DNA of 64,000 nucleotides, taken from NCBI RefSeq assembly GCF_006345805.1, contig NC_043019.1:14011360-14075359 (forward strand). Direction: 5' to 3'. Of this stretch, positions 7,625 through 63,780 are shown piece by piece. Under the pieces are notes generated by a model. That model had not been told where the DNA came from and ran no database searches. It saw only the letters and a program-made list of their open reading frames with translations. The number at the start of each line of letters is the position of its first letter. Positions within the stretch are counted from its first letter, which is position 1. The position numbers and the translations under genes were made by a program. Origin of the DNA: Octopus sinensis. Its lineage: Eukaryota.

Positions 7625-8400
7625 GCGTATATGGTGTAGTGTTTAAGAGCGCAGACTACTAACCCCAAGATTCTAAGTTCGATTCCAGGCTGTGACCTGA
7701 ATAATAATAATGATGATGATAATGATGACGACGATGATGATGACGACGACGACGACTACGACGATGACGACGACGACGACGACGATAATAATAATAATTG
7801 ACATGAGTATTCCTTGCAATCAAAATATAGCGGCGAAAGAATTTGACAAGATTAGTAAATATAAAGACTTGCTAAGAGAAATCGAAAAAATGTGGCATCT
7901 CAAGGCAACTACAGTACCAGTGATTGTAGGATCTCTAAGAATGATGAAAAAAGGCACTGAAACCTATTTGGAAATGATACCAGGCTTACCATCCCTTCAG
8001 GAAGTGCAAAAAATCGTGTTAACTGGAACGACTCATGTACTGAGAAGAGCATTATCGCTGTGAAAACAACATCCATTCATGAATTTATTTAATTATCAAT
8101 TTTTTAAAATACATATTTTACCTCTGAATTCGCGTGTGTAATCTGGGAAGGCATACAAGGAGCTTCGCTGCCCTAGGTGTATGGAAAACACTCAGCGAGA
8201 AATAAAAAATTTGAAGAAAGAAGGAAAAAAAATAATAATAATAACATCAAAAAATACCTTAGAATGAGAACCCAGGTTCAAAATTTCCCCAAGACACCTG
8301 ATGAAGGCTGGAGGGTATATCAGCCGAAACGTGTTAACAACAAACAAGATGAGGACAAATATCTGTCAAATGTAAATGATGTAGATATATAAATTCACTT
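7625..8400 (+). mobile_element. tRNA-headed SINE with a hammerhead-like tail, interrupted by a LINE fragment
   Basis: Head TGGTGTAGTGTTT...AGTTCGATTCC, then (AAT)n, then a tail with CTGATGA-A-GGCTG...CAGCC-GAAAC (8298-8330). An uninterrupted homologue lies at 51142-51408. Confidence 0.7.
7797..8228 (+). mobile_element. 5'-truncated R4/Dong-like (REL-endonuclease) non-LTR retrotransposon 3' end
   Basis: IDMSIPCNQNIAAKEFDKISKYKDLLREIEKMWHLKATTVPVIVGSL...LQEVQKIVLTGTTHVLRRALSL* (stop 8063), then a 3' UTR with AATAAA. Flanked by TAA-type repeats. Confidence 0.7.
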
Positions 8401-8914: not shown

Positions 8915-9290
8915 TAGCAGTATGGCCCGGCGTTGCTCGGGTTTGTTTTGAGAGTTTAGAATTGGAATTTTTGAAAAGTAAAAATTTTGCATTATGTAGC
9001 TTGTTATTCTCTTTAAGTGAACATTTTTCTGGTTGAAATACACTGAAAAATGGCAACACAGCAGTAAAAAAATCGTAAAAAATAGGGATAGAAAAAAAGC
9101 ACCTTTTTGATGTAAATACTTTTTGGTCTTAACATGGTCCGATTTGAAATTTTTATTCTACGGAAGGAAGAGCAAGCCTTCTTCTATCATACTCTCAATT
9201 TTGGTCAACTTGCACCACAGGGTCTCAGAGGAGATAGTGTTAGTTGAAGACTACCAAACCTGCCATACACAGACAACTTCAGTTTTATAT
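8914..9290 (-). mobile_element. non-autonomous Helitron-type element
   Basis: The minus-strand 3' end is a CCCGAGCAACGCCGGG hairpin followed by CTAG|T. Homologous to the + copy at 47705-48092. Confidence 0.65.
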
Positions 9291-9689
9291 GCTGGTGTGT
9301 TTACGTCCCTGTAACTTAGCGGTTCAGCAAATGAGACCGAGAGAGTAAGTACTAGGCTTACAAAGAATAAGTCCTGGGGTCGATTTGCTCGACTAAAGGC
9401 GGTGCTCTAGCATGGCCACAGTCAAATGACTGAAACAAGTAAAAGAGTAAAAGAGAATATGTATATCATGTGTGTATCATTAGCGATTTTCTTCCTCTGT
9501 CTTCCCTTCTTTGGACTTTTTCTATATTTCTGATGAAGAGCTTCGCTCAAAAAATGAAATCCTCTGTCTTTTCTTTCCATCCCTGAGCGTCCAATAATAC
9601 TGTACTTATTCCACGTCCTCGCGTTGTTGTTTTTTCTTGCTTGTTCATGTTTGGATTGACTATATAAATATATATATATATATATGTAA

Positions 9690-10045
9690 GTTATGAGAGG
9701 TAATGGTGTCAAGAAGACTCAAAGGTGTCAGGTAATGCTGAGTAAGAGCTATGAACAGACTATAGTTAAGCTCCAGAATTGGTGATTATATAGATGAGGA
9801 GTCCAATGTAGGTCATGTATCAGCATGTGTATATATAAAAAAAATTAACAGAATGAGATAAAAAAACCAAGGCTGTGAAAGATTTCAGAACATTTATAAA
9901 TAGAAGGTCTTACAGCTGTTTCCAGGATATTTTATATATCCCTTCATCAGAGACAGTGCAAGAAAATGGTTAAATTCTCTTTATAAATGTTCTGAAATCT
10001 TTCAAAGCCTTGGATTCTTTATCTCATTCTGTTAATTTATATATT
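9690..10045 (-). mobile_element. Penelope-like foldback element containing a hammerhead motif (copy 1)
   Basis: About 58-bp inverted arms (9842-9900 / 9980-10038) enclose a hammerhead at 9907-9954. Near-identical copy at 20141-20495. Adjacent to (TA)n. Confidence 0.65.
9907..9954 (-). ncRNA. minimal hammerhead ribozyme motif
   Basis: GUCU CUGAUGA A GGGAUAU-auaaa-AUAUCCU G GAA AC-AGCU-GU A AGAC. Palindromic stem III ACAGCUGU, GUA cleavage triplet. Confidence 0.7.
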
Positions 10046-10052
10046 ACATGCA

Positions 10053-10267
10053 CAAGGGGGTCCTGAATAGCTCCTGGCTTTCGGTAAAAAAAATACAAGG
10101 GGATCAGTTAATTATGATTTTATTCAATATATTCCCTTCTCAGATTCACACACCTGTTGCAGTGGTGTTTCAGTTTTTCTAATCCCTGTCAAAGAACTGA
10201 AAGGTTGGGCCTTCAACCAGGTCTTTCATGATACACTTAAAGCCAGGAACCTTTCAGCAACCCCTCA
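10053..10267. mobile_element. Tc1/mariner-type MITE
   Basis: Decayed terminal inverted repeats AGGGGGTCCTGAATAGCTCCTGGCTTT ... TAAAGCCAGGAACCTTTCAGCAACCCCT. Confidence 0.55.
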
Positions 10268-19138: not shown

Positions 19139-20140
19139 GTAAGGAGAGCACTTGGAAATATTTGTTCTACATTTGCTAAATTGATGTAAATATTATCTTT
19201 CATCTTTTAATCAAGAGAAAAGGGCAATATTTATGACCTTTTGACAGGGCCTCTAAGACTGATTGAAGGGAGGGATGAAGCTATATTGAAACTGGAGCGA
19301 ATAAGGCGGCGAGCTGGCAGAAACGTTAGCACGCCGGGCGAAATGCGTTGCCGTATTTCGTCTGCCGTTACATTCCGAGTTCAAATTCCGCCGAGGTCGA
19401 CTTTGCCTTTCATCCTTCCGGGGTCGATAAATTAAGTACCAGTTATGCACTGGGGTCGATGTAATCGACTTAATCCGTTTGTCTGTCGTTGTTTGTCTCC
19501 TCTGTGTTTAGCCCCTTGTGTGTGTAGTAAAGAAATATATATTGAAACTGGAGATTTCACCCAGGTTCTTGTAGCAGATTGGACACTGCTAAAAGCACAG
19601 ATAGGTCATCTTGAGGCATTAAATCCGGTGATGGATTTAAGTTTATCGCTTCAGTATCAAATTCCCGTTGTTGTAATCATGATAGACTTTAGCTGTTGTT
19701 GCGAGGGGGTTTGTTGGCTGGTCTGAGGTGATGACAGGTTGAGGTGATGAATGAAAATGTGTTTCTCATGCTGCGTGAAGAAGTAACTGACAATGCCCTT
19801 AAACAGTTAACAGGTGATTTTGTTACTGGACATTAAAGTTTTAACTGTGTTGGTCTTTTAATAATACTAACAGTTATAATTACAGCGGTGAGCTGGCAGA
19901 AATGTTAGCACACCTGGTGAAACGCTGAGCAGTATTTCGTCTGCCGCTACGTTCTGAGTTCAAATTCTTGCAACCTTTCAATAGTCTTGACTCTCAAGGT
20001 TGCAAGACGCAATGAAAATTTTAGGAAAATAAAAATAAGAAATAAGTGGAAATTTTACTGGTGAGTGTGTTAAATTATAAGGCACAAAAGAAAATTACTC
20101 TCCCCAGACACAAAAGAGTATATATATGTATATATTATAG

Positions 20141-20495
20141 GTTATGAGAGGTAATGGTGTCAGGAAGACCCAAAGGTGTCAGGTAATGCCGAGTAAGAGT
20201 TATGAACAGACTATAGTTAAGCTCCAGGTTTGAGGATTATATAGATGAGGAGTCCAACGTAGGTCATATATCAGCATGTGTATATATAAAAAAATTAACA
20301 GAATGAGATAAAGAATCCAAGACTGTGAAAGATTTCAGAACATTTATAAAAGGAAAGTCTTACAGCTGTTTCCAGGATATTTTATATATCCCTTCATCAG
20401 AGACGGTGCAAGAAAATGGTTAAATTTTCTTTATAAATGTTCTGAAATCTTTCACAGCCTTGGATTCTTTATCTCATTCTGTTAATTTTATATAT
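20141..20495 (-). mobile_element. Penelope-like foldback element containing a hammerhead motif (copy 2; hammerhead 20357-20404)
   Basis: Near-identical to 9690-10045, with the same GUCU/AGAC stem I and ACAGCUGU stem III. Confidence 0.65.
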
Positions 20496-20908
20496 ATTAA
20501 TGAATGTATGTATGTATGTATGTATGTGTATGTATGTATGTATGTATTAACCATCTAACCTGAATTGGATGTGCTGCTTAGAAGGCCTTAGACTACAGTG
20601 AATGTCCCAAAAAATATTCGTATATAGACAACAAATGTTAAAAAGTACAGGTTATATTAGCTGACAAACTTTTCCTCAATCACCAGATGGCACTACTGAA
20701 TCACATGATTTCATGGATCATCAGTAGATGCTAACCAAGCACCAAATACCAGATCGAAAATCAGTGAAACTGATGTAGCATAATACTAATTAAACAGCAA
20801 ATGATAGCGTAAAAAGCTGGTGGGCTGTGAATAAACTAGCTCTTAGCTGCAAAAGTGGCCTTTCTAATGAATATTAATTAGCACATCCAATATGAATTCA
20901 TGTTTTAG

Positions 20909-28528: not shown

Positions 28529-28705
28529 AACATGTGACGGCACCGATGCACGGAGAATGGGATGAATGGAGCAACTGGGCCCCGTGTTCCACCTCTTGCG
28601 GTAACGGCCGACAAAAGAGGGTCCGCAATTGCCTTCCGCTCAAGACTCACTGCTTTGGCAATCGCAAGGAAGTAAAAAGCTGCCTGAAAAGAAATTGCAC
28701 TCAAG
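28529..28705 (+). CDS. TSP1 exon 11
   Basis: tttcAG|...|GTgggg (weak donor), 177 bp, phase 1-1. HVTAPMHGEWDEWSNWAPCSTSCGNGRQKRVRNCLPLKTHCFGNRKEVKSCLKRNCTQ. Confidence 0.85.
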
Positions 28706-28926
28706 GTGGGGGATATATTTGGAATTCTGTTGATGTAAGTCTGTTAGCGCGTGTAATAAAACCCTGCTTGATTTCTCTGGTTGTAACAGGCTTATATACT
28801 AATTAGTTATGTCCAGGTGCAGGCGTGGCTGTGCGGTAACGAGCTTGCTTCCCAACTACATGGTTCCGGGTTCAGTCCCACTACTGTGTGGCTCCTTGGT
28901 CAAGTGTGTTCTACTGTTCTACTATG

Positions 28927-29028
28927 GCCTTGGGCTAACCAAAGCCTTGGGCTGACCAAAGCCTTGGGCTGACCAAAGCCTTGGGCTGACCAAAGCCTTG
29001 GGCTGACCAAAGCCTTGGGCTGACCAAA
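28927..29028 (+). repeat. 17-bp unit x6 slippage expansion inside a family A SINE
   Basis: (GCCTTGGGCTGACCAAA)6. Confidence 0.9.
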
Positions 29029-29433
29029 GCCTTGTGAGTGGATCTGGTACACGGAAACATACATATATATTAGTCGGTAGTTCATAAGTCCGAAAAAGAA
29101 GTACAATCTAAGATTTTAAAACTGTAATACTTTGAAGGTTGACTGCTATGGCTAGTTAGAGAGTGACCATTCGTCTTGCACCCATAAAGCTCTCATCATC
29201 TATAACACACACACACACACACATACACACATGTGTATATATATATATATATTTAACAATTATTGTTAAATTTATTCCGAAATACTTTTCTTACCCGACA
29301 TGCAGTTCGGAAAAGCCCGCCATTTACCGAATATATGATTTATAAACATTCCATGTGCTTGGCCGGAGTGAATAGATGTCTGTTCGTCTTCGCTAGGTAA
29401 GGTTGGTGGTTTATTTATGATGTGTTCAGAATC

Positions 29434-29490
29434 AGTTCTGCTGATGATCATAGACGTAAGTTAAATGTGAAATCACGGTGATACAGAACT
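29434..29490 (+). ncRNA. minimal hammerhead ribozyme motif, sense strand of intron 11
   Basis: AGUUCUG CUGAUGA UCAUAGACGUAAGUUAAAUGU GAA AUCAC-G-GUGAU A CAGAACU. Perfect 7-bp stem I, quasi-palindromic stem III. Confidence 0.75.
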
Positions 29491-29885
29491 AAATTCATTT
29501 TTTAAATGTCTTGCTTTGAAGAACTGCATTAGGTATGATTAGTGTAATTTTAGTAGTAATGACTTTGTCCCTCCTAACGTGAGGCATTTATGTGTAATAA
29601 TGCCCTCTATACAATATATATATATATATATATGATAACAAAATAATATGTGAAACATGCATATATACATACATGTATGTATATACCTACATCTATATGT
29701 ATATATACATGTATATATGGGTACAGGATACAAAAAAAAACATAGAACACAAGGAGAAACAAAAACATAAAATCAAAACCAAGGAAATGAACTATTTTTC
29801 AAACAACGCAAAAACAGAGTACAAGACATACAACACAAGGAATATTCCCCTTCTTCAGTTGCCCCTGTTTCGGCTACTCCGCGTT

Positions 29886-29932
<47 letters not shown>

Positions 29933-31116
29933 ATGTTTGTCCACCACATGCATACAAACACATGCATACACAAACGCATGCACACACAAACACACACATG
30001 TATGCAAGTATGCACACACACATACACACATACAAACGCATACATACAATGAGCTTCGACACAGTTTCCGTCTTCCAGATCCATTCACAAGTCATTGGTC
30101 GTCCTGAAGCTATAGCAAAAGACATTTGTCCAAAGTACTGCACAGTGAGATTGAACCCTCAACCACATGGTTGTAAAGTGAGCTCCTTAGCCACCACACA
30201 GCTATGCCTATGCTGTTTACCCTTAAGGAAAATTTCAGGCAGAATTGATGTAACTTAGTGTGGCAAAGCCAGGGCCTTTAAACTGTATGTAAATTCCATT
30301 CAGTAGGCTTCCTGTTAGTTTCTGGCAACACCATTTCACTCATAAGGAAAGGGTTGACTGAGGCATTATAAAAGAGACTTGCCCAAGAAGTGATGCTGTG
30401 AGATTGATCCTACGTCCTCACGATTGCAAAATTAACTTCTTAACCACCTGGCTAGGCTAGAGCCAAATTTGCTTTTTCTCTTCTTTATGTGTATTTGTAC
30501 TTAAACCATAATCATCTGTATTTGTGTGTGTGCATACAATTGTGAGTGCGTGCATGTGTGTGACTCTGTTGGTAAGACTTGTTTAGTAAAATCGATAAAG
30601 ATTTTTTTTACGGTTATTCCTAGGTTTTGAATTTTTTATTTTAGCAAATAAAATAATTTGCCATATATATATATGTATGTATGTATACACTCTCAGAGTG
30701 GTTGGCATTAGGAAAGGCATCCAGCTGTAGAAACTTTGCCAGATCAAACCGTCCAACCCAAGCCAGCATGGAAAGCGGATAGTAAACGATGATGATGATG
30801 TATATATATATATGTATAACGTCTGTTGTCCATGCTGGCATGGGTTGGGTGGTATGACTAGAGCTGGCAAGCCAGCGGGGATGCACCAGACTCCAGTCTG
30901 CTTTGGCATGGTTTCTACGGCTGGATGCTCTTCCTAACACCAACCACTTTGCTTAGTGTGCTGGATGCTTTTACATAGCACCACATGGGTGCTTTTACGT
31001 ATCGCCACACGGGTGCTTTCACGTGGCACTGCACATGCGCTTTTAAGTGGCACCTCCATGGTTGCTTTATACAACCAGAAGGATCGGTCTTAACACTTCT
31101 GCTGCAGAGGACGGGT

Positions 31117-32266: not shown

Positions 32267-32566
32267 ACATGTGTGTGTATATTTGTGTTAATATGTATGT
32301 CTATCTACCTATGGCTGTGTGGTAAGTAGCTTACTTACCAACCACATGGTTCCAGGTTCAGTCCCACTGCATGACACCTTGGGCAAGTGTCTTCTACTAT
32401 CGCCTCTGGCTGACCAAAGCCTTGTGAGTGGATTTGATAGACGGAAACTGAAGGAAACCCACCGTATATATATATATATATATATATGTAGGTCCCGGGT
32501 TGATTCGGGGTTAACCACAGTAAATAAGGTACTCAATACATAGTAGAGTAAAATTAATTATTATAT

Positions 32567-32724
32567 AGAAGGAGCTTCTACAGGACTAGAACTGTTTCAT
32601 TCAAGAGAAATCTTCAGGAAGCTAGTTAACAAGAATGTATAAATGCCAATACAATCTTTTGTTAACTAGCTTCCTGAAGATTTCTCTTGAATGAAACAGT
32701 TCTAGTCCTGTAGAAGCTCCTTCT
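32567..32724. ncRNA. perfect foldback carrying two hammerhead motifs (- at 32573-32623, + at 32668-32718)
   Basis: 66-bp perfect inverted arms with a 26-nt spacer. Each arm reads AGCUUC CUGAAGA UUUCUCUUGAAU GAA ACAG-uucuaguc-CUGU A GAAGCU. Confidence 0.75.
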
Positions 32725-32728
32725 TATA

Positions 32729-32773
<45 letters not shown>

Positions 32774-34108: not shown

Positions 34109-35433
34109 GCATGCTTGCACAGGAGTGGCTGTGTGGTAAGTAGCTTGCTAACCAGCCACATGGTTCTGGGTTCAGTCCCACTGCATGGCATCTTGGGCAA
34201 ATGTTTTCTGCTATAGCCTCGGGCCGACCAAAGCCTTGTGAGTGGATTTGGTAGACGGAAACTGAAAGAAGCCTGTCGTATATATGTATATATATATGTA
34301 TGTGTATGTATATGTTTGTGTGTTTGTGTTTGTCCCTCTAGCATTGCTTGACAACCAATGCTGGTGTGTTTACGTCCCCGTAACTTAGCGGTTCGGCAAA
34401 AGAGACCAATAGAATAAGTACTGGGCTTACAAAAGAATAAGTCCCAGGGTCGATTTGCTCGACTAAAGGCGGTGCTCCAGCATGGCTGCAGTCAAATGAC
34501 TGAAACAAGTAAAAGATACCTGTATACACACACTTAGGAAATATATCGAATGATTCAGAAAGAGTCAGTGATGGATGATGAGGAGGAAGGAATGAAGGAG
34601 AGACGAAAGGTTACTCATTTTATTCAGAGGGGCATCTTCTCAAATTTTTGCTCTTTTGTAATGTTAATACCTATTTCTTTACTGTCCACAAGGGGCTAAA
34701 CACAGAGGGGACAAGCAAGGACAGACATAGGTATCAAGTCGATTACATCGACCCCAGTGTGTAACTGTTACTTTATTTATCGACCCCGAAAGGATGAAAG
34801 GCAAAGTCGACCTCGGCGGAATTTGAACTCAGGATGTAACGGCAGATGAAATACCGCTAAGCATTTTGCCGGCATGCTAACGGTTCTGCCAGCTCGTCAC
34901 CTTTGATAAATTGAATACCAGTTACGTACTGGGGTTGATCTAATTGACTGGCCCCCTCCCCAAAAATTGCAACCCTTGTGCCTAGAGTAGAAAAGAATCA
35001 TTAGCACACTAGGTGAAATGCTCAGCAGTATTTCGCCTGCCGCTACGTTCTGAGTTCAAATTCCGCCGAGGTCGACTTTGCCTTTCATCCTTTCGGGGTC
35101 AATAAATTAAGTACCAATTATGTACTGGGGTCGATGTAATCGACTTAATCCCTTTGTCTGTCCTTGTTTGTCCCCTCTATGTTTAGCCCCTTGTGGGTAA
35201 TAAAGACATCTGCTGCTACATTCTGAGTTCAAATTCTGCCAGGGTCAACTTTGCCTTTCATCCTTTCATTGTCGATTAAATAAGTACCAGTTATGCACTG
35301 GGGTCGATATAATCGGCTCAATCCCTTCCCCCAAATTTGAGGCCTTGTGCTTCCAGTAGAAAGGATTAATTAATGCAGTTACATGCTTAATTTATAATGT
35401 TTTTTTTTTTTTTATTTGTTGCTCTTCTTCCAG

Positions 35434-35606
35434 GAAAATTTGTCTCCACAGGTGGACATTGGGCACAGTGGTCACAGTGGTCAAACTGCTCAGTTGATTG
35501 TGGCTGGGTCAGCAGAGACGAAGACGTACTTGTCAGCCAGTCAGTCATCATTGTGAGGGTGACATCAGCAATGTGCGATCGTGTATGGAAAGAAGCTGCT
35601 TTCCAG
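35434..35606 (+). CDS. TSP1 exon 12 (1-bp deletion/frameshift near 35505 as assembled)
   Basis: ccAG|...|GTaac, 173 bp. KFVSTGGHWAQWSQWSNCSVDCG in one frame and GQQRRRRTCQPVSHHCEGDISNVRSCMERSCFP in the other. Confidence 0.8.
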
Positions 35607-41709: not shown

Positions 41710-42944
41710 TTTTTTTTTGGTGGTTGTGGCAATGGTGGTGGTGTCGGCGGCAGCAGTGGCAATATTGATGGTTGCAATGATGGTGTTGGTGGTGGTGGTT
41801 GTGGTGGTACTCATAGTGACACTGGCAGCAATGGTAGTGGTTGTGGTGATGGTGGTAGTTGTGTTTGTGGTGGTGGTGGTGGTGATGGTTGTGGTGGTGG
41901 TGGTGGTGGTGGTTAGGTGGTGGTTGTGGTGGTACACAGAGTGACAGTGGCAGCAATGGCAGTGGTTGTGGTGATGGTGGTAGTTGTGTTTGTGGTGGTG
42001 GTGATGGTAGTTGTGGTTGTGGTGGTGGTGGTTGTGGTGGTACACATAGTGACGGTGGCAGCAATGGTAGTGGTTGTGGTGATGGTGGTAGTTGTGTTTG
42101 TGGTGGTGGTGGTTGTGGTGGTACACATAGTGACGGTGGCAGCAATGTAGTGGTTGTGGTGACGGTGTATGTGGTTGTGGTGTTGTGGTAGTTGTGGTTG
42201 TGGTGTGGTGGTGTTGTGGTGGTACACATAGTGACGGTGGCAGCAATGGTAGTGGTTGTGGTGATGGTGGTAGTTGTGTTTGTGGTGGTGGTGATGGTAG
42301 TTGTGGTTGTGGTGGTGGTGGTGGTTGTGGTGATACACATAGTGACGGTGGCAGCAATGGTAGTGGTTGTGGTGATGGTGGTAGTTGTGTTTGTGGTGGT
42401 GGTGGTTGTGGTGGTACACATAGTGACGGTGGCAGCAATGGTAGTGGTTGTGGTGATGGTGGTAGTTGTGTTTGTGGTGGTGGTGATGGTAGTTGTGGTT
42501 GTGGTGGTGGTGGTGGTGGTGGTACACATAGTGACGGTGGCAGCAATGGTAGTGTTGTGGTGACGGTGGTATTGTGTTTGTGTGGTGGTGATGTAGTTGT
42601 GGTTGTGGTGGTGGTGGTGGTTGTGGTGATACACATAGTGACGGTGGCAGCAATGGTAGTGGTTGTGGTGATGGTGGTAGTTGTGTTTGTGGTGGTGGTG
42701 GTTGTGGTGGTACACATAGTGACGGTGGCAGCAATGGTAGTGGTTGTGGTGACGGTGGTAGTTGTGTTTGTGGTGGTGGTGATGTTGTGTTGTGGTGGTG
42801 GTGGTGGTGGTGTGGTGGTGGTGGTGGTTGTGGTGCTACACATAGTGACGGTGGCAGCAATGGTAGTAGTTGTGGTAGTTGTGGTTGTGGTGGTGGTGGT
42901 GATGGTTGTGGTAGTTGTGGTGGTGGTGATGGTAGTGGTGGTGT
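41710..42944. repeat. (GTG/GTT)-rich compound minisatellite with a recurring CACATAGTGACGGTGGCAGCAATGGTAG unit
   Basis: Direct inspection. It lies in the intron between the EGF and TM exons. Confidence 0.9.
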
Positions 42945-42991
42945 TATATTTTAAAGTAAAATAACCTTTATCTTCCCACGTTTCCTTTCAG

Positions 42992-59031: not shown

Positions 59032-59500
59032 CATCCATCCATCCATCCATCCATCCATCTGTCTGTCTCTGTCTGTCTCTGTCTGTTTAACTGTCTGTCC
59101 ATCCATCCATGTCATTGCGTATCTCTCTCTCTATCTATCTATCTATCCTCCCTCCATATTATTCTATATTTCTCTCCCCTCCCCCTCTCTCTCTCTCTAT
59201 CTATCTATCTGTCTGTCTATCTATCTCCCCTCCCCCTCTTCCTACTTGTAATATTTAGTTACTCCGAATAATTTATCCTCTGTGAACGGAACCGGCAGGA
59301 TCGATAGAACGTCGGAATAACATGCTTTACTCTACTTGTTCCGATTCTCTACATTCTGAGTTCAAATACCACCGAAATTAACTTAGCATTTCATCGTTTC
59401 AAACTCGACAGAATTAAGTACCAGTCACGTACTGAGGCTGACAGCATCGACAGACCTCCTCCTCTCAAAATTTCAGGGCCTGTGAATAACACAAAATCAG

Positions 59501-60510
59501 TATTTAGTTAATTCAACGTTCTTTGTAGTCTTTTTACATTCTTAGGTTCACTGCAAGAACCACACGCGTCCAAAATAACGATCAACAATGTTATCGTCTG
59601 TAAAACGCTCCGACATGGTCGTCTGCTTCCCACTAAAGACATAAAGACGTCTTTAGTTAAATTGCTCAGGTATCCACGAAAATAATATTTAGTTAATTCA
59701 ACGTTCTTCGTAGTCTTTTTACATTCTTAAGCTCACTGCAAGAACCACACACGCCCAAAATAACGAACAACGATGTTATCGTCTGTAAAACGCCATGACA
59801 TGGTCGTCTGCTTCCCACTAAAGACATAAAGACGTCTTTAGTTAAATTGCTCAGGTATCCACGAAAACAATATTTAGTTGATTCAACGTTCTTTGTAGTC
59901 TTTTTACATTCTTAGACTCACTGCAAGAACCACACACGCCCAAAATAACGAACAACGATGTTATCGTCTGTAAAACGCCATGACATGGTCGTCTACTTCC
60001 CACTAAAGACATAAAGACGTCTTTAGTTAAATTGCTCAGGTATCCACGAAAACAATATTTAGTTGATTCAACGTTCTTTGTAGTCTTTTTACATTCTTAG
60101 ACTCACTGCAAGAACCACACACGCCCAAAATAACGAACAACGATGTTATCGTCTGTAAAACGCCATGACATGGTCGTCTGCTTCCCACTAAAGGCATAAA
60201 GACGTGTTTAGTTAAATTGCTCAGGTATCCACGAAAACAATATTTAGTTGATTCAACGTTCTTTGTAGTCTTTTTACATTCTTAGGTTCACTGCAAGAAC
60301 CACACACGCCCAAAATAACGAACAACGATGTTATCGTCTGTAAAACGCCATGACATGGTCGTCTGCTTCCCACTAAAGGCATAAAGACGTGTTTAGTTAA
60401 ATTGCTCAGGTATCCACGAAAACAATATTTAGTTGATTCAACGTTCTTTGTAGTCTTTTTACATTCTTAGGTTCACTGCAAGAACCACGCGCGCCCAAAA
60501 CAACGAACAA
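59501..60510. repeat. 185-bp satellite, about 5.5 copies
   Basis: ATTCAACG recurs at 59511, 59696, 59881, 60066, 60251 and 60436, an exact 185-bp period. Confidence 0.95.
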
Positions 60511-63034: not shown

Positions 63035-63565
63035 TATATAGAGGCATTATACATACATGCCAGGAGGCATTCTACATACACGCCATACGCTAAGAGGGAC
63101 AATCAGTCATTTCTACAAAAAATATACTAATCCCACCGAATGCAATTTTCAAAGAAAGACATTTAAAAATATATAGACCTGTATCACAGTGATTTCATAC
63201 TTACGTAATCATCAGCAGGCTGAATATACTATAAATAAACAACGACCCTGCTTCGCTTAAGCCGATCAGCTAACTGATCAACATCAACGACGCACATGGG
63301 TGGGTTTATATATACTATATCCGGATGAATGGAACTGGCTTTTACGAATGCATTTCGGTCGTTGTTTATTTATAGTATATTCAGGCTGCTGATGATTACG
63401 TAAGTATGAAATCACTGTGATACAGGTCTATATATTTTAAATGTCTTTCTTTGAAAAATTGCATTCGGTGGGATTAGTAAATTTTTTGGTAGAAATGACT
63501 GATTGTCCCTCTTAGCGTATGGCGTGTATGTAGAATGCCTCCTGGCATGTATGTATAATGCCCTC

Positions 63566-63572
<7 letters not shown>
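63035..63572. mobile_element. Penelope-like foldback with arms of about 210 bp, each carrying a hammerhead motif (- at 63177-63220, + at 63384-63427)
   Basis: Arms 63035-63247 / 63357-63572. The minus copy reads GCCUG CUGAUGA UUACGUAAGUAU GAA AUCA-CUG-UGAU A CAGGU. Confidence 0.7.
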
Positions 63573-63613
<41 letters not shown>

Positions 63614-63780
63614 ATGCGCCAGGCGTGGCTGTGTGGTGAGAAGCTTGCTTCCCGACCATATGGCTCCGAGTTCAGTCCAATTGCGTAGTACCTTGGGCAA
63701 GTGTCTCTACTAAAGCCTCGGGCCGATCAAAGCCTTTTGAGTGGATTTGGTAGACTGAAACTGCTGAAAGAAGAGCCCGT

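What the first reader, a model, noticed from the sequence alone, without database searches (positions are those of the whole stretch)
29434..29490. Intact hammerhead in the sense strand of the TSP1-receptor pre-mRNA
It has a perfect 7-bp stem I (AGUUCUG/CAGAACU), a complete CUGAUGA...GAA core, stem III AUCAC-G-GUGAU and an AUA triplet, 730 nt downstream of the weak exon 11 donor. Unlike most other intact motifs it is on the transcribed strand and is not masked by an antisense arm. Stem II is closed by U.U rather than the usual purine-pyrimidine pair, a feature shared with the 32.6-kb and 63.2-kb motifs. Inference: it could cut intron 11 co-transcriptionally and favour a truncated TSP1-only transcript or alter splicing.
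Basis: partly seen in the sequence, partly recalled or inferred. Interest (0 to 1): 0.7.

Follow-up and report, generated by a model that had tools for sequence, protein, structure and literature searches.

The report
Transposon-borne hammerhead motif in an intron
The hammerhead ribozyme motif is really there on the transcribed strand of an intron, but it is one diverged copy of a roughly 320-base mobile repeat that carries this motif, and nothing found here suggests it regulates the host gene.

Summary
Window 29434-29490 (+) has a 7-bp stem I, CUGAUGA, a stem II closed by U.U, GAA, stem III and an AUA cleavage triplet (cut after 29483). It lies in an intron of a + strand gene with at least 13 TSP1-repeat exons. 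A hammerhead descriptor gives 4 hits in the window against 0.005 expected from shuffles.

The motif is not gene-specific. It sits inside a ~320-nt, AT-rich repeat bounded by (TA)n. Two more copies lie at 63.0-63.6 kb, as a full-length copy head-to-head with a 5'-truncated inverted copy. That layout, plus a type I hammerhead with a short palindromic stem III, matches Penelope-like-element (PLE) hammerhead elements and animal non-LTR retrozymes. The U.U feature is already described in axolotl retrozymes, where it goes with weak monomer cleavage.

Evidence against efficient cleavage:
- Rfam Hammerhead_1 scores 12.7 bits against a threshold of 34.
- Folding puts an alternative rod-like hairpin that buries the core about 6 kcal/mol below the hammerhead fold.
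- Published work reports that only fast intronic ribozymes disturb splicing.

Verdict: an ordinary new member of a known kind. The regulatory inference is unsupported. Activity is untested, and no relatives from other genomes could be retrieved.

The parts
29434..29440 (+). Hammerhead stem I, 5' strand (AGUUCUG)
   Evidence: Pairs perfectly with 29484-29490. Pair probability is 0.94 in the context of the whole element.
29441..29447 (+). Core C3-A9 (CUGAUGA)
   Evidence: Identical in the two 63-kb copies.
29448..29468 (+). Stem-loop II: U10.1.U11.1, then C-G, A-U, U-A, an internal loop, A-U, C-G (plus G.U) and a GUAA loop
   Evidence: It is about 9 nt longer than stem II of the 63-kb copies (U.U, U-A, A-U, C-G, GUAA). 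A competing register (U15-A37 to A19-U33 in motif numbering) pairs G12 and A13 with probability 0.89.
29469..29471 (+). Core G12 A13 A14 (GAA)
29472..29482 (+). Stem III AUCA-CGG-UGAU (A15.1-U16.1 plus 3 bp, triloop). Near-palindromic, so it could form a 10-bp intermolecular helix in a dimer
   Evidence: The dimer MFE of -31.9 kcal/mol contains the extended stem III. Monomer pair probability is 0.003.
29483..29483 (+). H17 = A, with predicted cleavage 3' of this base (triplet AUA)
   Evidence: Read directly from the sequence.
29484..29490 (+). Hammerhead stem I, 3' strand (CAGAACU)
29296..29612 (+). The repeat copy that carries the motif (about 317 nt by homology; 29254-29295 may be an extension). 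GC is 0.35 and there is no ORF of note
   Evidence: blastn gives 71% identity over 307 nt to 63358-63074(-) and 70% over 253 nt to 63361-63593(+). Supported by the alignment A1 and nhmmer. GC.
29236..29252 (.). (TA)n run about 44 nt upstream of the homology start (adjacent if 29254-29295 belongs to the element)
   Evidence: Only 9% of window positions lie within 25 nt of a (TA)5+ run.
29614..29633 (.). (TA)n run flanking the 3' side of the element
63041..63357 (-). Full-length copy of the same family, with a hammerhead at 63177-63220(-)
63358..63565 (+). 5'-truncated copy of the same family, head-to-head with the previous one, followed by (TA)n at 63574-63609. Its hammerhead core lies at 63389-63411 and stem I is reduced to 3 bp by a C-to-G change
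   Evidence: The arms are about 98% identical over about 217 nt, by my count from the alignment.
28529..28705 (+). Host TSP1-repeat exon upstream of the motif (177 nt, phase 1-1, donor AAG|GUGGGG)
   Evidence: The boundaries are inferred from AG/GT sites and reading frame, not from transcripts.
35434..35606 (+). Next TSP1-repeat exon downstream (acceptor at 35433 or 35451), about 5.95 kb from the predicted cut

Best explanation
The motif is the hammerhead module of a short (~320 nt), AT-rich, non-coding interspersed repeat. The repeat inserted in sense orientation into a (TA)n microsatellite inside an intron of a TSP1-repeat gene.

Its features place the family with the type I hammerhead elements that depend on Penelope-like retrotransposons (PLEs): animal 'non-LTR retrozymes' and pLTR-derived elements (pLTR = the pseudo-LTR of a PLE). 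Those features are unit size, low GC, a type I hammerhead with a short near-palindromic stem III, (TA)n at the element ends, and a head-to-head pair of a full-length and a 5'-truncated copy.

In such elements the ribozyme serves the element. It cuts multimeric or read-through transcripts to unit length, often acting as a dimer, before ligation to circles and reverse transcription. That step is inferred from the literature and was not shown here.

The 29.4-kb copy is a solitary monomer with no partner. I expect it to be a neutral passenger of the intron, with weak or no self-cleavage as a monomer. My estimates are about 40% that any cleavage is measurable in vitro and 10% or less that cleavage is fast enough in vivo to affect splicing or isoform output.
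For: Repeat origin:
- Homology of 300+ nt to two other copies.
- The hammerhead core, stem III and H17 are identical across copies that are only about 71% identical overall.
- Stems I and II differ between the 29-kb and 63-kb copies in ways that keep pairing. In stem I, C-G changes to U-A. In stem II, the inserted CAU and AUG are complementary. This is suggestive only, because there are just two independent sequences.

PLE/retrozyme-like architecture:
- At 63 kb a full-length copy lies head-to-head with a 5'-truncated inverted copy. PMC8557442 describes this arrangement for PLEs.
- A (TA)n run directly abuts 4 of the 6 ends of the three hammerhead-bearing loci. A fifth, the 29-kb 5' end, is adjacent only if the 42-nt stretch 29254-29295 belongs to the element. 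Only 9% of window positions lie within 25 nt of such a run. (TA)n is a listed PLE target.
- Unit size and GC fit the 150-450 bp and below-50% GC reported for metazoan retrozymes.
- Monomer copies in introns are common. About 43% of Xenopus copies overlap introns.

Weak activity:
- U.U at 10.1/11.1 has a precedent in axolotl HHR_Amex2, which shows 22% cleavage in 1 h as a monomer and cleaves better as a dimer.
- Rfam gives 12.7 bits against a threshold of 34.
- The hammerhead fold is about 6 kcal/mol above the MFE. The fraction of the ensemble with the core unpaired is 1e-4, against 1e-2 and 4e-2 for the 63-kb and 32.6-kb motifs.

No sign of selection after insertion: the two 63-kb arms differ by about 2% both inside and outside the hammerhead.
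Against: - No direct tandem array (the defining retrozyme layout) and no PLE reading frame is present in the window, so the link to PLEs rests on architecture and on the literature.
- Only three copies were available, and no copies from elsewhere in the genome or from other species could be retrieved.
- Nearest-neighbour folding ignores tertiary contacts and co-transcriptional folding, so it can mispredict ribozyme activity.
- This copy has the best stem I of all the motifs (7 perfect bp) and no antisense partner, so real activity cannot be excluded.
- Transcription of the locus was not tested.
Confidence: 0.75

Rival explanations
1. One reading: the sense-strand hammerhead is active in the nascent pre-mRNA. 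It cuts intron 11 before the next exon is made, and so lowers full-length mRNA, changes splicing or favours a truncated product. This would resemble the intronic CPEB3 ribozyme or the mammalian intronic hammerheads HH9 and HH10.
For: - Sense orientation in an intron of a + strand gene.
- Complete core and the best stem I in the window.
- No antisense arm in the intron.
- About 5.95 kb of intron remains to be transcribed after the cut site, which gives minutes for cleavage.
- There is precedent for intronic ribozymes tuned to co-transcriptional splicing (PMC10919898).
Against: - It is a copy of a repeat, not a unique conserved element.
- U.U at 10.1/11.1 and a PLE-type short stem III go with slow cleavage.
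- A predicted inactive rod fold dominates.
- Slow intronic ribozymes have no effect on splicing.
- The cleavage product lacks poly(A) (general knowledge).
- No partner copy is near for dimer formation; the nearest same-strand copy is 34 kb away.
Confidence: 0.07
2. The repeat is a foldback or MITE-like DNA transposon (or another non-retro element). On this reading its hammerhead-like sequence is not a working ribozyme in any copy, only a motif match propagated by transposition.
For: - The 32.6-kb and 63-kb loci are palindromic.
- The elements are flanked by TA-rich sequence, and TA is the target of Stowaway-like MITEs (general knowledge).
- Rfam does not recognise any copy.
- Folding z-scores of the motifs are unremarkable, from -1.6 to +0.5.
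Against: - Two or three unrelated repeat families in the same 64 kb each carry a full hammerhead core with all three stems. The descriptor gives 4 hits against 0.005 expected. That is hard to explain without function in the source elements.
- The 29-kb copy is not palindromic.
- The 63-kb pair is asymmetric, with one arm 5'-truncated, which is typical of retroelements and specifically of PLEs.
- Hammerhead orientation is constant relative to the (TA)n-proximal 3' end.
Confidence: 0.1
3. A chance match, or a different intronic RNA such as a C/D box snoRNA (UGAUGA resembles a C box).
For: Weak Rfam matches to C/D snoRNA families overlap the site: SNORD79 at 19.4 bits (E = 3.9), snR60/Z15 (E = 4.6) and snoZ188 (E = 2.6).
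Against: - All snoRNA matches are far below threshold.
- There is no CUGA D box next to the 3' strand of the terminal stem (read directly from the sequence).
- The descriptor is essentially never matched in shuffles.
- The motif is inherited from a repeat family.
Confidence: 0.02

Closest known systems
Metazoan non-LTR retrozymes (type I hammerhead repeats of coral, mussel and axolotl; PMC7229834, PMC7761336), especially axolotl HHR_Amex2
   Same: - Type I topology.
- Unit of about 320 nt, within the reported 150-450 bp range.
- GC below 45%.
- A weak, short helix III.
- A U.U mismatch at the base of helix II, exactly as described for HHR_Amex2.
- Monomer copies scattered through genes and introns, as reported for Xenopus.
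   Different: No direct tandem repeat is seen in the window, only a solo copy and a head-to-head inverted pair. No evidence of circular RNA was available. Stem II of this copy is longer and interrupted.
Minimal type I hammerheads of Penelope-like elements (Cervera & de la Pena 2014; Lunse, Weinberg & Breaker 2017; summarised in PMC6765202 and PMC8557442)
   Same: - A short palindromic stem III that suggests dimer action.
- An inverted 5'-truncated copy next to a full copy.
- Insertion at microsatellites, including (TA)n.
- A high density of such motifs in an invertebrate genome.
   Different: No reverse transcriptase/GIY-YIG reading frame or recognisable pLTR is present in the window. Stem III here is 4 bp plus a triloop, which is longer than in the most minimal PLE variants. 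The hammerhead lies mid-element rather than at the very 3' end.
Schistosoma Sm-alpha/Sj-alpha SINE-like elements with a hammerhead (reviewed in PMC6765202)
   Same: A short (~330 nt) non-coding dispersed retroposon-like repeat that carries a type I hammerhead.
   Different: No tRNA-like or pol III box region was detected (ARAGORN found none). The Schistosoma ribozymes have a canonical G-C at 10.1/11.1 and are matched by Rfam Hammerhead_1, whereas this motif is not.
Host-conserved intronic ribozymes: mammalian HH9/HH10 (de la Pena & Garcia-Robles 2010) and the CPEB3 HDV-like ribozyme (PMC10919898)
   Same: A self-cleaving motif on the sense strand of an intron of a protein-coding gene.
   Different: Those are single-copy, conserved at orthologous positions and experimentally active. 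This one is a recent-looking repeat copy with predicted misfolding, and no conservation data could be obtained.

Membership tests
Hammerhead ribozyme (type I) | Conserved core C3 U4 G5 A6 N7 G8 A9 and G12 A13 A14 | tested here: met
   CUGAUGA at 29441-47 and GAA at 29469-71.
Hammerhead ribozyme (type I) | A15.1-U16.1 pair and a non-G residue at the cleavage site (N-U-H triplet) | tested here: met
   A29472 pairs with U29482, H17 = A29483, and the triplet is AUA.
Hammerhead ribozyme (type I) | Three helices (I open, II and III closed) can be drawn around the core | tested here: met
   Stem I is 7 bp, stem II is 3 + 3 bp with a GUAA loop, and stem III is 4 bp plus a triloop. The descriptor hit compares with 0.005 expected in shuffles.
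Hammerhead ribozyme (type I) | The three-helix fold is the favoured or an accessible conformation | tested here: inconclusive
   The hammerhead fold is -6.9 kcal/mol against an MFE of -12.8. Stem III pair probability is 0.003 and the alternative rod pairings about 0.87-0.89. The energy model ignores tertiary contacts and kinetics. The dimer MFE does form an extended stem III.
Hammerhead ribozyme (type I) | Watson-Crick (usually G-C) pair at 10.1/11.1 closing helix II (quasi-conserved) | tested here: not met
   It is U.U. A natural precedent with weak activity is axolotl HHR_Amex2.
Hammerhead ribozyme (type I) | Score at or above the Rfam RF00163 gathering threshold | tested here: not met
   No hit at gathering threshold in the window. 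The score is 12.7 bits against 34, with E = 1.8 in 96 nt. The 63-kb copies give no hit at all.
Hammerhead ribozyme (type I) | [quoted passage not shown] | not testable with these tools
   This needs an in vitro transcription and cleavage assay or RNA-end mapping.
Metazoan non-LTR retrozyme | Repeat unit of about 150-450 bp with low GC that contains a type I hammerhead | tested here: met
   The unit is about 317-359 nt with GC 0.354 and one hammerhead per unit.
Metazoan non-LTR retrozyme | Direct tandem arrangement (dimer to multimer) | tested here: not met
   The window holds only a solo copy and a head-to-head inverted pair. Monomer derivatives are described in the literature, so this lowers the membership claim for the locus but not for the family.
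Metazoan non-LTR retrozyme | Unit-length linear and circular RNAs in vivo | not testable with these tools
   No transcriptome data were available.
Penelope-like-element (PLE) associated hammerhead element | An inverted 5'-truncated copy adjacent to a full copy | tested here: met
   63041-63357(-) lies head-to-head with 63358-63565(+). The pattern is described in PMC8557442.
Penelope-like-element (PLE) associated hammerhead element | Insertion bias for microsatellites such as (TA)n | tested here: met
   A (TA)5+ run directly abuts 4 of 6 element ends. A fifth, the 29-kb 5' end, is adjacent only if 29254-29295 belongs to the element. The background is 9% of positions within 25 nt of such a run.
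Penelope-like-element (PLE) associated hammerhead element | Sequence relationship to a PLE pLTR, or a PLE RT/GIY-YIG gene in the same genome | not testable with these tools
   No repeat library or host genome was accessible. The window has no non-repetitive ORF above 200 aa. The protein database holds no close relative of this locus.
Host-exapted intronic ribozyme (HH9/HH10, CPEB3 type) | Sense strand of an intron | tested here: met
Host-exapted intronic ribozyme (HH9/HH10, CPEB3 type) | Unique locus conserved at the orthologous position across species | tested here: not met
   It is not unique, being one of three repeat copies in 64 kb. Orthologous conservation could not be tested.
C/D box snoRNA | C box RUGAUGA and D box CUGA next to a terminal stem | tested here: not met
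   UGAUGA is present, but there is no CUGA near the 3' strand. All Rfam snoRNA matches have E of 2.6 or higher.

The most novel reading that the evidence does not exclude
The most novel readings not excluded are these.

(a) This solitary sense-strand copy has been co-opted. Slow or regulated self-cleavage of intron 11 would tune how much full-length TSP1/Ig/EGF mRNA is made, in the manner of the CPEB3 ribozyme.

(b) This genome carries a lineage-specific class of hammerheads with U.U at 10.1/11.1 in at least two unrelated short elements. Each would have a built-in rod-versus-hammerhead conformational switch (UGAU pairing with AUCA) that restricts cleavage to dimers or multimers.
Probability: 0.07. 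Interest if true: 0.6.

Novelty: new member of a known kind. Interest (0 to 1): 0.25.

Why it matters
If the copy were active in the nascent transcript, it would be a rare invertebrate case of a transposon-delivered ribozyme acting on a host pre-mRNA. It would also give a handle on how ribozyme speed competes with splicing.

As it stands, it mainly documents three things:
- This genome is rich in small hammerhead-bearing elements, with several families in 64 kb.
- The U.U variant known from axolotl retrozymes also occurs here.
- Consensus-complete motifs in introns are an expected by-product of such elements. They should not be read as regulatory devices without cleavage data.

Tried and rejected
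1. Rfam. At gathering threshold over the whole window it finds nothing. Permissive searches around 29.4 kb and 63.3 kb give only a sub-threshold Hammerhead_1 match at 29435-29489 and low-complexity miRNA or snoRNA noise.
2. Finding orthologues and the organism. I searched the large protein database with concatenated TSP1 exon translations. The best hits are 36-39% identical (properdin-like, coadhesin-like, hemicentin-like proteins from other phyla), with no near-identical protein. The 'Octopus' attribution and cross-species conservation therefore could not be checked.
3. Scanning metagenome contigs for the family's hammerhead (CTGATGA..GAAATCACNGTGATACAG) gave 0 hits.
4. nhmmer with a family profile found no further copies in the window.
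5. ARAGORN found no tRNA-like part, so a tRNA-derived SINE origin has no support.
6. The C/D snoRNA reading was rejected because there is no D box.
7. The 185-bp tandem array at 59.5-60.5 kb was tested as a possible retrozyme array. It has no CUGANGA on either strand.
8. I looked for selection on the hammerhead after insertion by comparing the two 63-kb arms. There is none: about 2% divergence both inside and outside the motif.
9. The CUGAUGA..GAAA matches at 8298 and 9530 lack the stems and are treated as chance.

Full report
**The observation.** The sequence at 29434-29490 (+) reads AGUUCUG-CUGAUGA-UCAUAGACGUAAGUUAAAUGU-GAA-AUCACGGUGAU-A-CAGAACU.
- All invariant hammerhead positions are present: C3-A9, G12-A14, the A15.1-U16.1 pair, and H17 = A at 29483.
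- Stem I is 7 perfect base pairs.
- Stem II is closed by U.U. It continues with C-G, A-U, U-A, an internal loop, three more pairs and a GUAA tetraloop.
- Stem III can only be 4 bp with a CGG triloop.

I wrote a descriptor requiring stem I of at least 4 bp, stem II of at least 3 bp with a tolerated 10.1/11.1 mismatch, stem III of at least 3 bp, and the core. It finds four sites in the window: 29434+, 32668+, 32573- and 63177-. The mean over 200 dinucleotide-preserving shuffles is 0.005. A plain CUGAUGA..GAAA pattern gives 7 matches against 1.7 expected. The motif is therefore real and not a chance match.

**Rfam.** Rfam does not recognise it. There is no hit at gathering threshold in the whole window. 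No hammerhead appears at E up to 10 in a 1-kb search. Hammerhead_1 scores 12.7 bits against a threshold of 34 when only 96 nt are searched.

**Gene context.**
- Thirteen TSP1-repeat exons (W-x2-W-x2-W/C...CSxxCG) lie on the + strand between 4.76 and 36.3 kb, and none on the - strand.
- Ig-like (38.8 and 40.5 kb) and EGF-like (41.3 kb) exon-sized ORFs follow on the same strand. I read those two domain labels by eye from the translations and did not run a domain search.
- The exon upstream of the motif is 28529-28705 (177 nt, phase 1-1) with donor AAG|GUGGGG.
- The next exon begins at 35434 or 35452.
- The motif therefore starts 729 nt into a ~6.7-kb intron on the sense strand, and about 5.95 kb of intron follows the predicted cut.
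- No stretch of 9 nt or more elsewhere in the intron is complementary to 29420-29505.

They rest on exon prediction from sequence, not on transcripts. The organism could not be verified, because the protein database returned nothing closer than 39% identity.

**What the motif belongs to.** blastn of 29000-30000 against the window aligns 29295-29593 to 63358-63074 on the - strand (71% over 307 nt). It also aligns 29406-29633 to 63361-63593 on the + strand (70% over 253 nt). A three-way alignment and a profile search show exactly three copies of one family.
- The unit is about 317 nt by homology, has GC 0.35 and has no ORF of note. The hammerhead starts about 139 nt from its 5' end.
- At 63 kb a full-length copy (63041-63357, - strand) abuts, head-to-head, a 5'-truncated copy (63358-63565, + strand). 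Their shared 217 nt are about 98% identical by my count from the alignment.
- A (TA)n run directly abuts the 3' end of the 29-kb copy, the right end of the 63-kb pair and both ends of the 32.6-kb palindrome, which is 4 of 6 ends. The 5' end of the 29-kb copy is adjacent to a (TA)n run only if the 42-nt stretch 29254-29295 belongs to the element. Only 9% of window positions lie within 25 nt of a (TA)5+ run.

**Conservation within the family.** The hammerhead core, stem III (apart from the central loop base) and H17 are identical between the 29-kb and 63-kb copies, although overall identity is about 71%. The helices differ in ways that keep pairing. In stem I a C-G pair becomes U-A. In stem II the 29-kb copy has extra CAU and AUG segments that are complementary to each other. 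With only two independent sequences this is suggestive and no more. The two young 63-kb arms differ by about 2% both inside and outside the hammerhead, so there is no sign of selection after insertion.

**Comparison with known elements.**
- Type I hammerheads in animals are reported mainly in two related settings. [quoted passage not shown] The other is the pseudo-LTRs (pLTRs) of Penelope-like elements (PLEs), where minimal hammerheads have a very short palindromic helix III and cleave slowly, probably as dimers (PMC7229834, PMC7761336, PMC6765202).
- PLE insertions typically show an inverted 5'-truncated copy next to a full copy and a bias for microsatellite targets, including (TA)n (PMC8557442).
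[quoted passage not shown] It reports that monomer copies are spread along chromosomes and that about 43% of Xenopus copies overlap introns.
- The U.U mismatch at the base of helix II is described for axolotl HHR_Amex2 (about 60,000 copies). That ribozyme cleaves weakly as a monomer (22% in one hour) and much better in dimeric constructs.

The present family matches these descriptions in size, composition, hammerhead type, the U.U feature, near-palindromic stem III (UCACNGUGA), the inverted-truncated architecture and (TA)n association. It does not show a direct tandem array, and the window contains no PLE gene. I therefore file it as a member of this general kind. I do not treat it as a demonstrated retrozyme.

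**Is this copy likely to cut?** By consensus it could, but several points argue for weak activity.
- The hammerhead fold has -6.4 to -6.9 kcal/mol. The minimum-free-energy fold has -12.8 kcal/mol and is a single imperfect hairpin.
- In that hairpin C3-G5 pair with the stem III loop, U7-A9 pair with the 5' strand of stem III, and a shifted stem II register pairs G12 and A13.
- When the whole element is folded, stem III has pair probability 0.003 and the hammerhead register of stem II 0.015. The competing pairings have about 0.87-0.89 at 37 C and about 0.91-0.92 at 18 C.
- The fraction of the ensemble with the core unpaired is 1e-4 here, against 1e-2 for the 63-kb copy and 4e-2 for the 32.6-kb motif. 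The insertions specific to this copy make it the most trap-prone of the three.
- A two-molecule fold (-31.9 kcal/mol) does form the extended intermolecular stem III expected for a double hammerhead. However, the nearest same-strand family copy is 34 kb away.

These are nearest-neighbour predictions without tertiary or kinetic terms, so they lower the probability of activity without excluding it.

**Would cleavage matter?**
- According to work summarised in PMC10919898, fast ribozymes placed in introns reduce splicing and protein output, whereas slow ones have no effect.
- The natural CPEB3 ribozyme is effective because its half-life (2-3 min) matches the time needed to transcribe the rest of the intron.
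- The paper that introduced exon tethering (Dye et al. 2006) appears in the reference list of PMC2288634. I recall, from my own knowledge, that it found intron cleavage by a hammerhead need not prevent splicing.
- Also from my own knowledge, a 5' fragment ending in a cyclic phosphate has no poly(A) tail and would not be a stable 'TSP1-only' mRNA.
- The open frame that continues from exon 11 into the intron stops at 28806, long before the cut site.

My estimates are about 0.4 for any measurable in vitro cleavage and 0.1 or less for an effect on the host transcript.

**Verdict.** The best explanation is a solitary intronic copy of a hammerhead-bearing, probably PLE-dependent, non-autonomous retroelement. 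It is a new member of a known kind and of modest interest. The decisive tests are a cleavage assay, RNA-end mapping at 29483/29484, and a genome-wide census of the family with a test for orientation bias in introns. None of these was possible here.

Noticed in passing
window 32568-32725: A near-perfect 158-nt palindrome flanked by (TA)n on both sides (32465-32487 and 32733-32770). It carries a second, unrelated hammerhead motif on both strands (32668-32718 + and 32573-32623 -). The core is CUGAAGA..GAA, with U.U at 10.1/11.1, a 6-bp stem I and a stem III of 4 bp plus an 8-nt loop. In RNA each motif would be masked by the other arm.
   Followed up: partly
window 9826-10054 and 20277-20497 (- strand; cores at 9919-9950 and 20369-20400): A third hammerhead-like family: GUCU-CUGAUGA-A-GGGAUAU..AUAUCCU-G-GAAA-CAGCUG-U-A-AGAC. 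It has an extra base after A9 and a loop-less palindromic stem III (CAGCUG), the dimer-type form typical of PLE hammerheads. The motif sits at the apex of a ~55-bp imperfect hairpin. Regions 9669-10044 and 20119-20495 are 93% identical. Both copies are antisense to the gene.
   Followed up: partly
window 35434-35606: The TSP1-repeat exon after the intron changes reading frame after ..CSVDCG (about 35505, in a GGG run). The exon is 173 or 155 nt long, one short of a multiple of 3, whereas the neighbouring exon is 177 nt in phase 1-1. This is either an assembly indel or a real frameshift that would truncate the protein independently of any ribozyme.
   Followed up: partly
window 59490-60510: A tandem array with period 185 bp, 5.5 copies and 96% matches. 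It has no CUGANGA on either strand, so it is not a hammerhead retrozyme array.
   Followed up: yes
window 34673-34866 and 35016-35209: An inverted repeat of 194 nt (88% complementary, 149 nt apart) in the same intron, just upstream of the acceptor of the next exon. It could form a long hairpin in the pre-mRNA.
   Followed up: no
window 63620-63773 and more than 25 other sites; 9289-9466 and more than 15 other sites: Two very abundant short interspersed repeats of about 150-180 nt at 75-92% identity fill the introns and often lie next to microsatellites. ARAGORN finds no tRNA-like structure in them.
   Followed up: no
window 15040/18991, 24437/26158 and 22629: Several TSP1 exons encode nearly identical peptides, for example [48 protein letters not shown] twice. 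This indicates recent tandem duplication of exon-intron blocks within the gene.
   Followed up: no
window 29254-29270: A 17-nt perfect palindrome (TTAACAATTATTGTTAA) lies directly after the upstream (TA)n, in the 42 nt between the microsatellite and the start of family homology. It may be the 30-40 bp 'tail' extension described for PLE insertions, or unrelated.
   Followed up: no
window 42592-42950 (+ frame): A G/C-rich minisatellite that translates as a Gly/Cys/Ser-rich repeat (CSCGCGGGGGCGDTHSDGGSNGSGCGDGG...). Its composition is unlike the rest of the AT-rich window.
   Followed up: no
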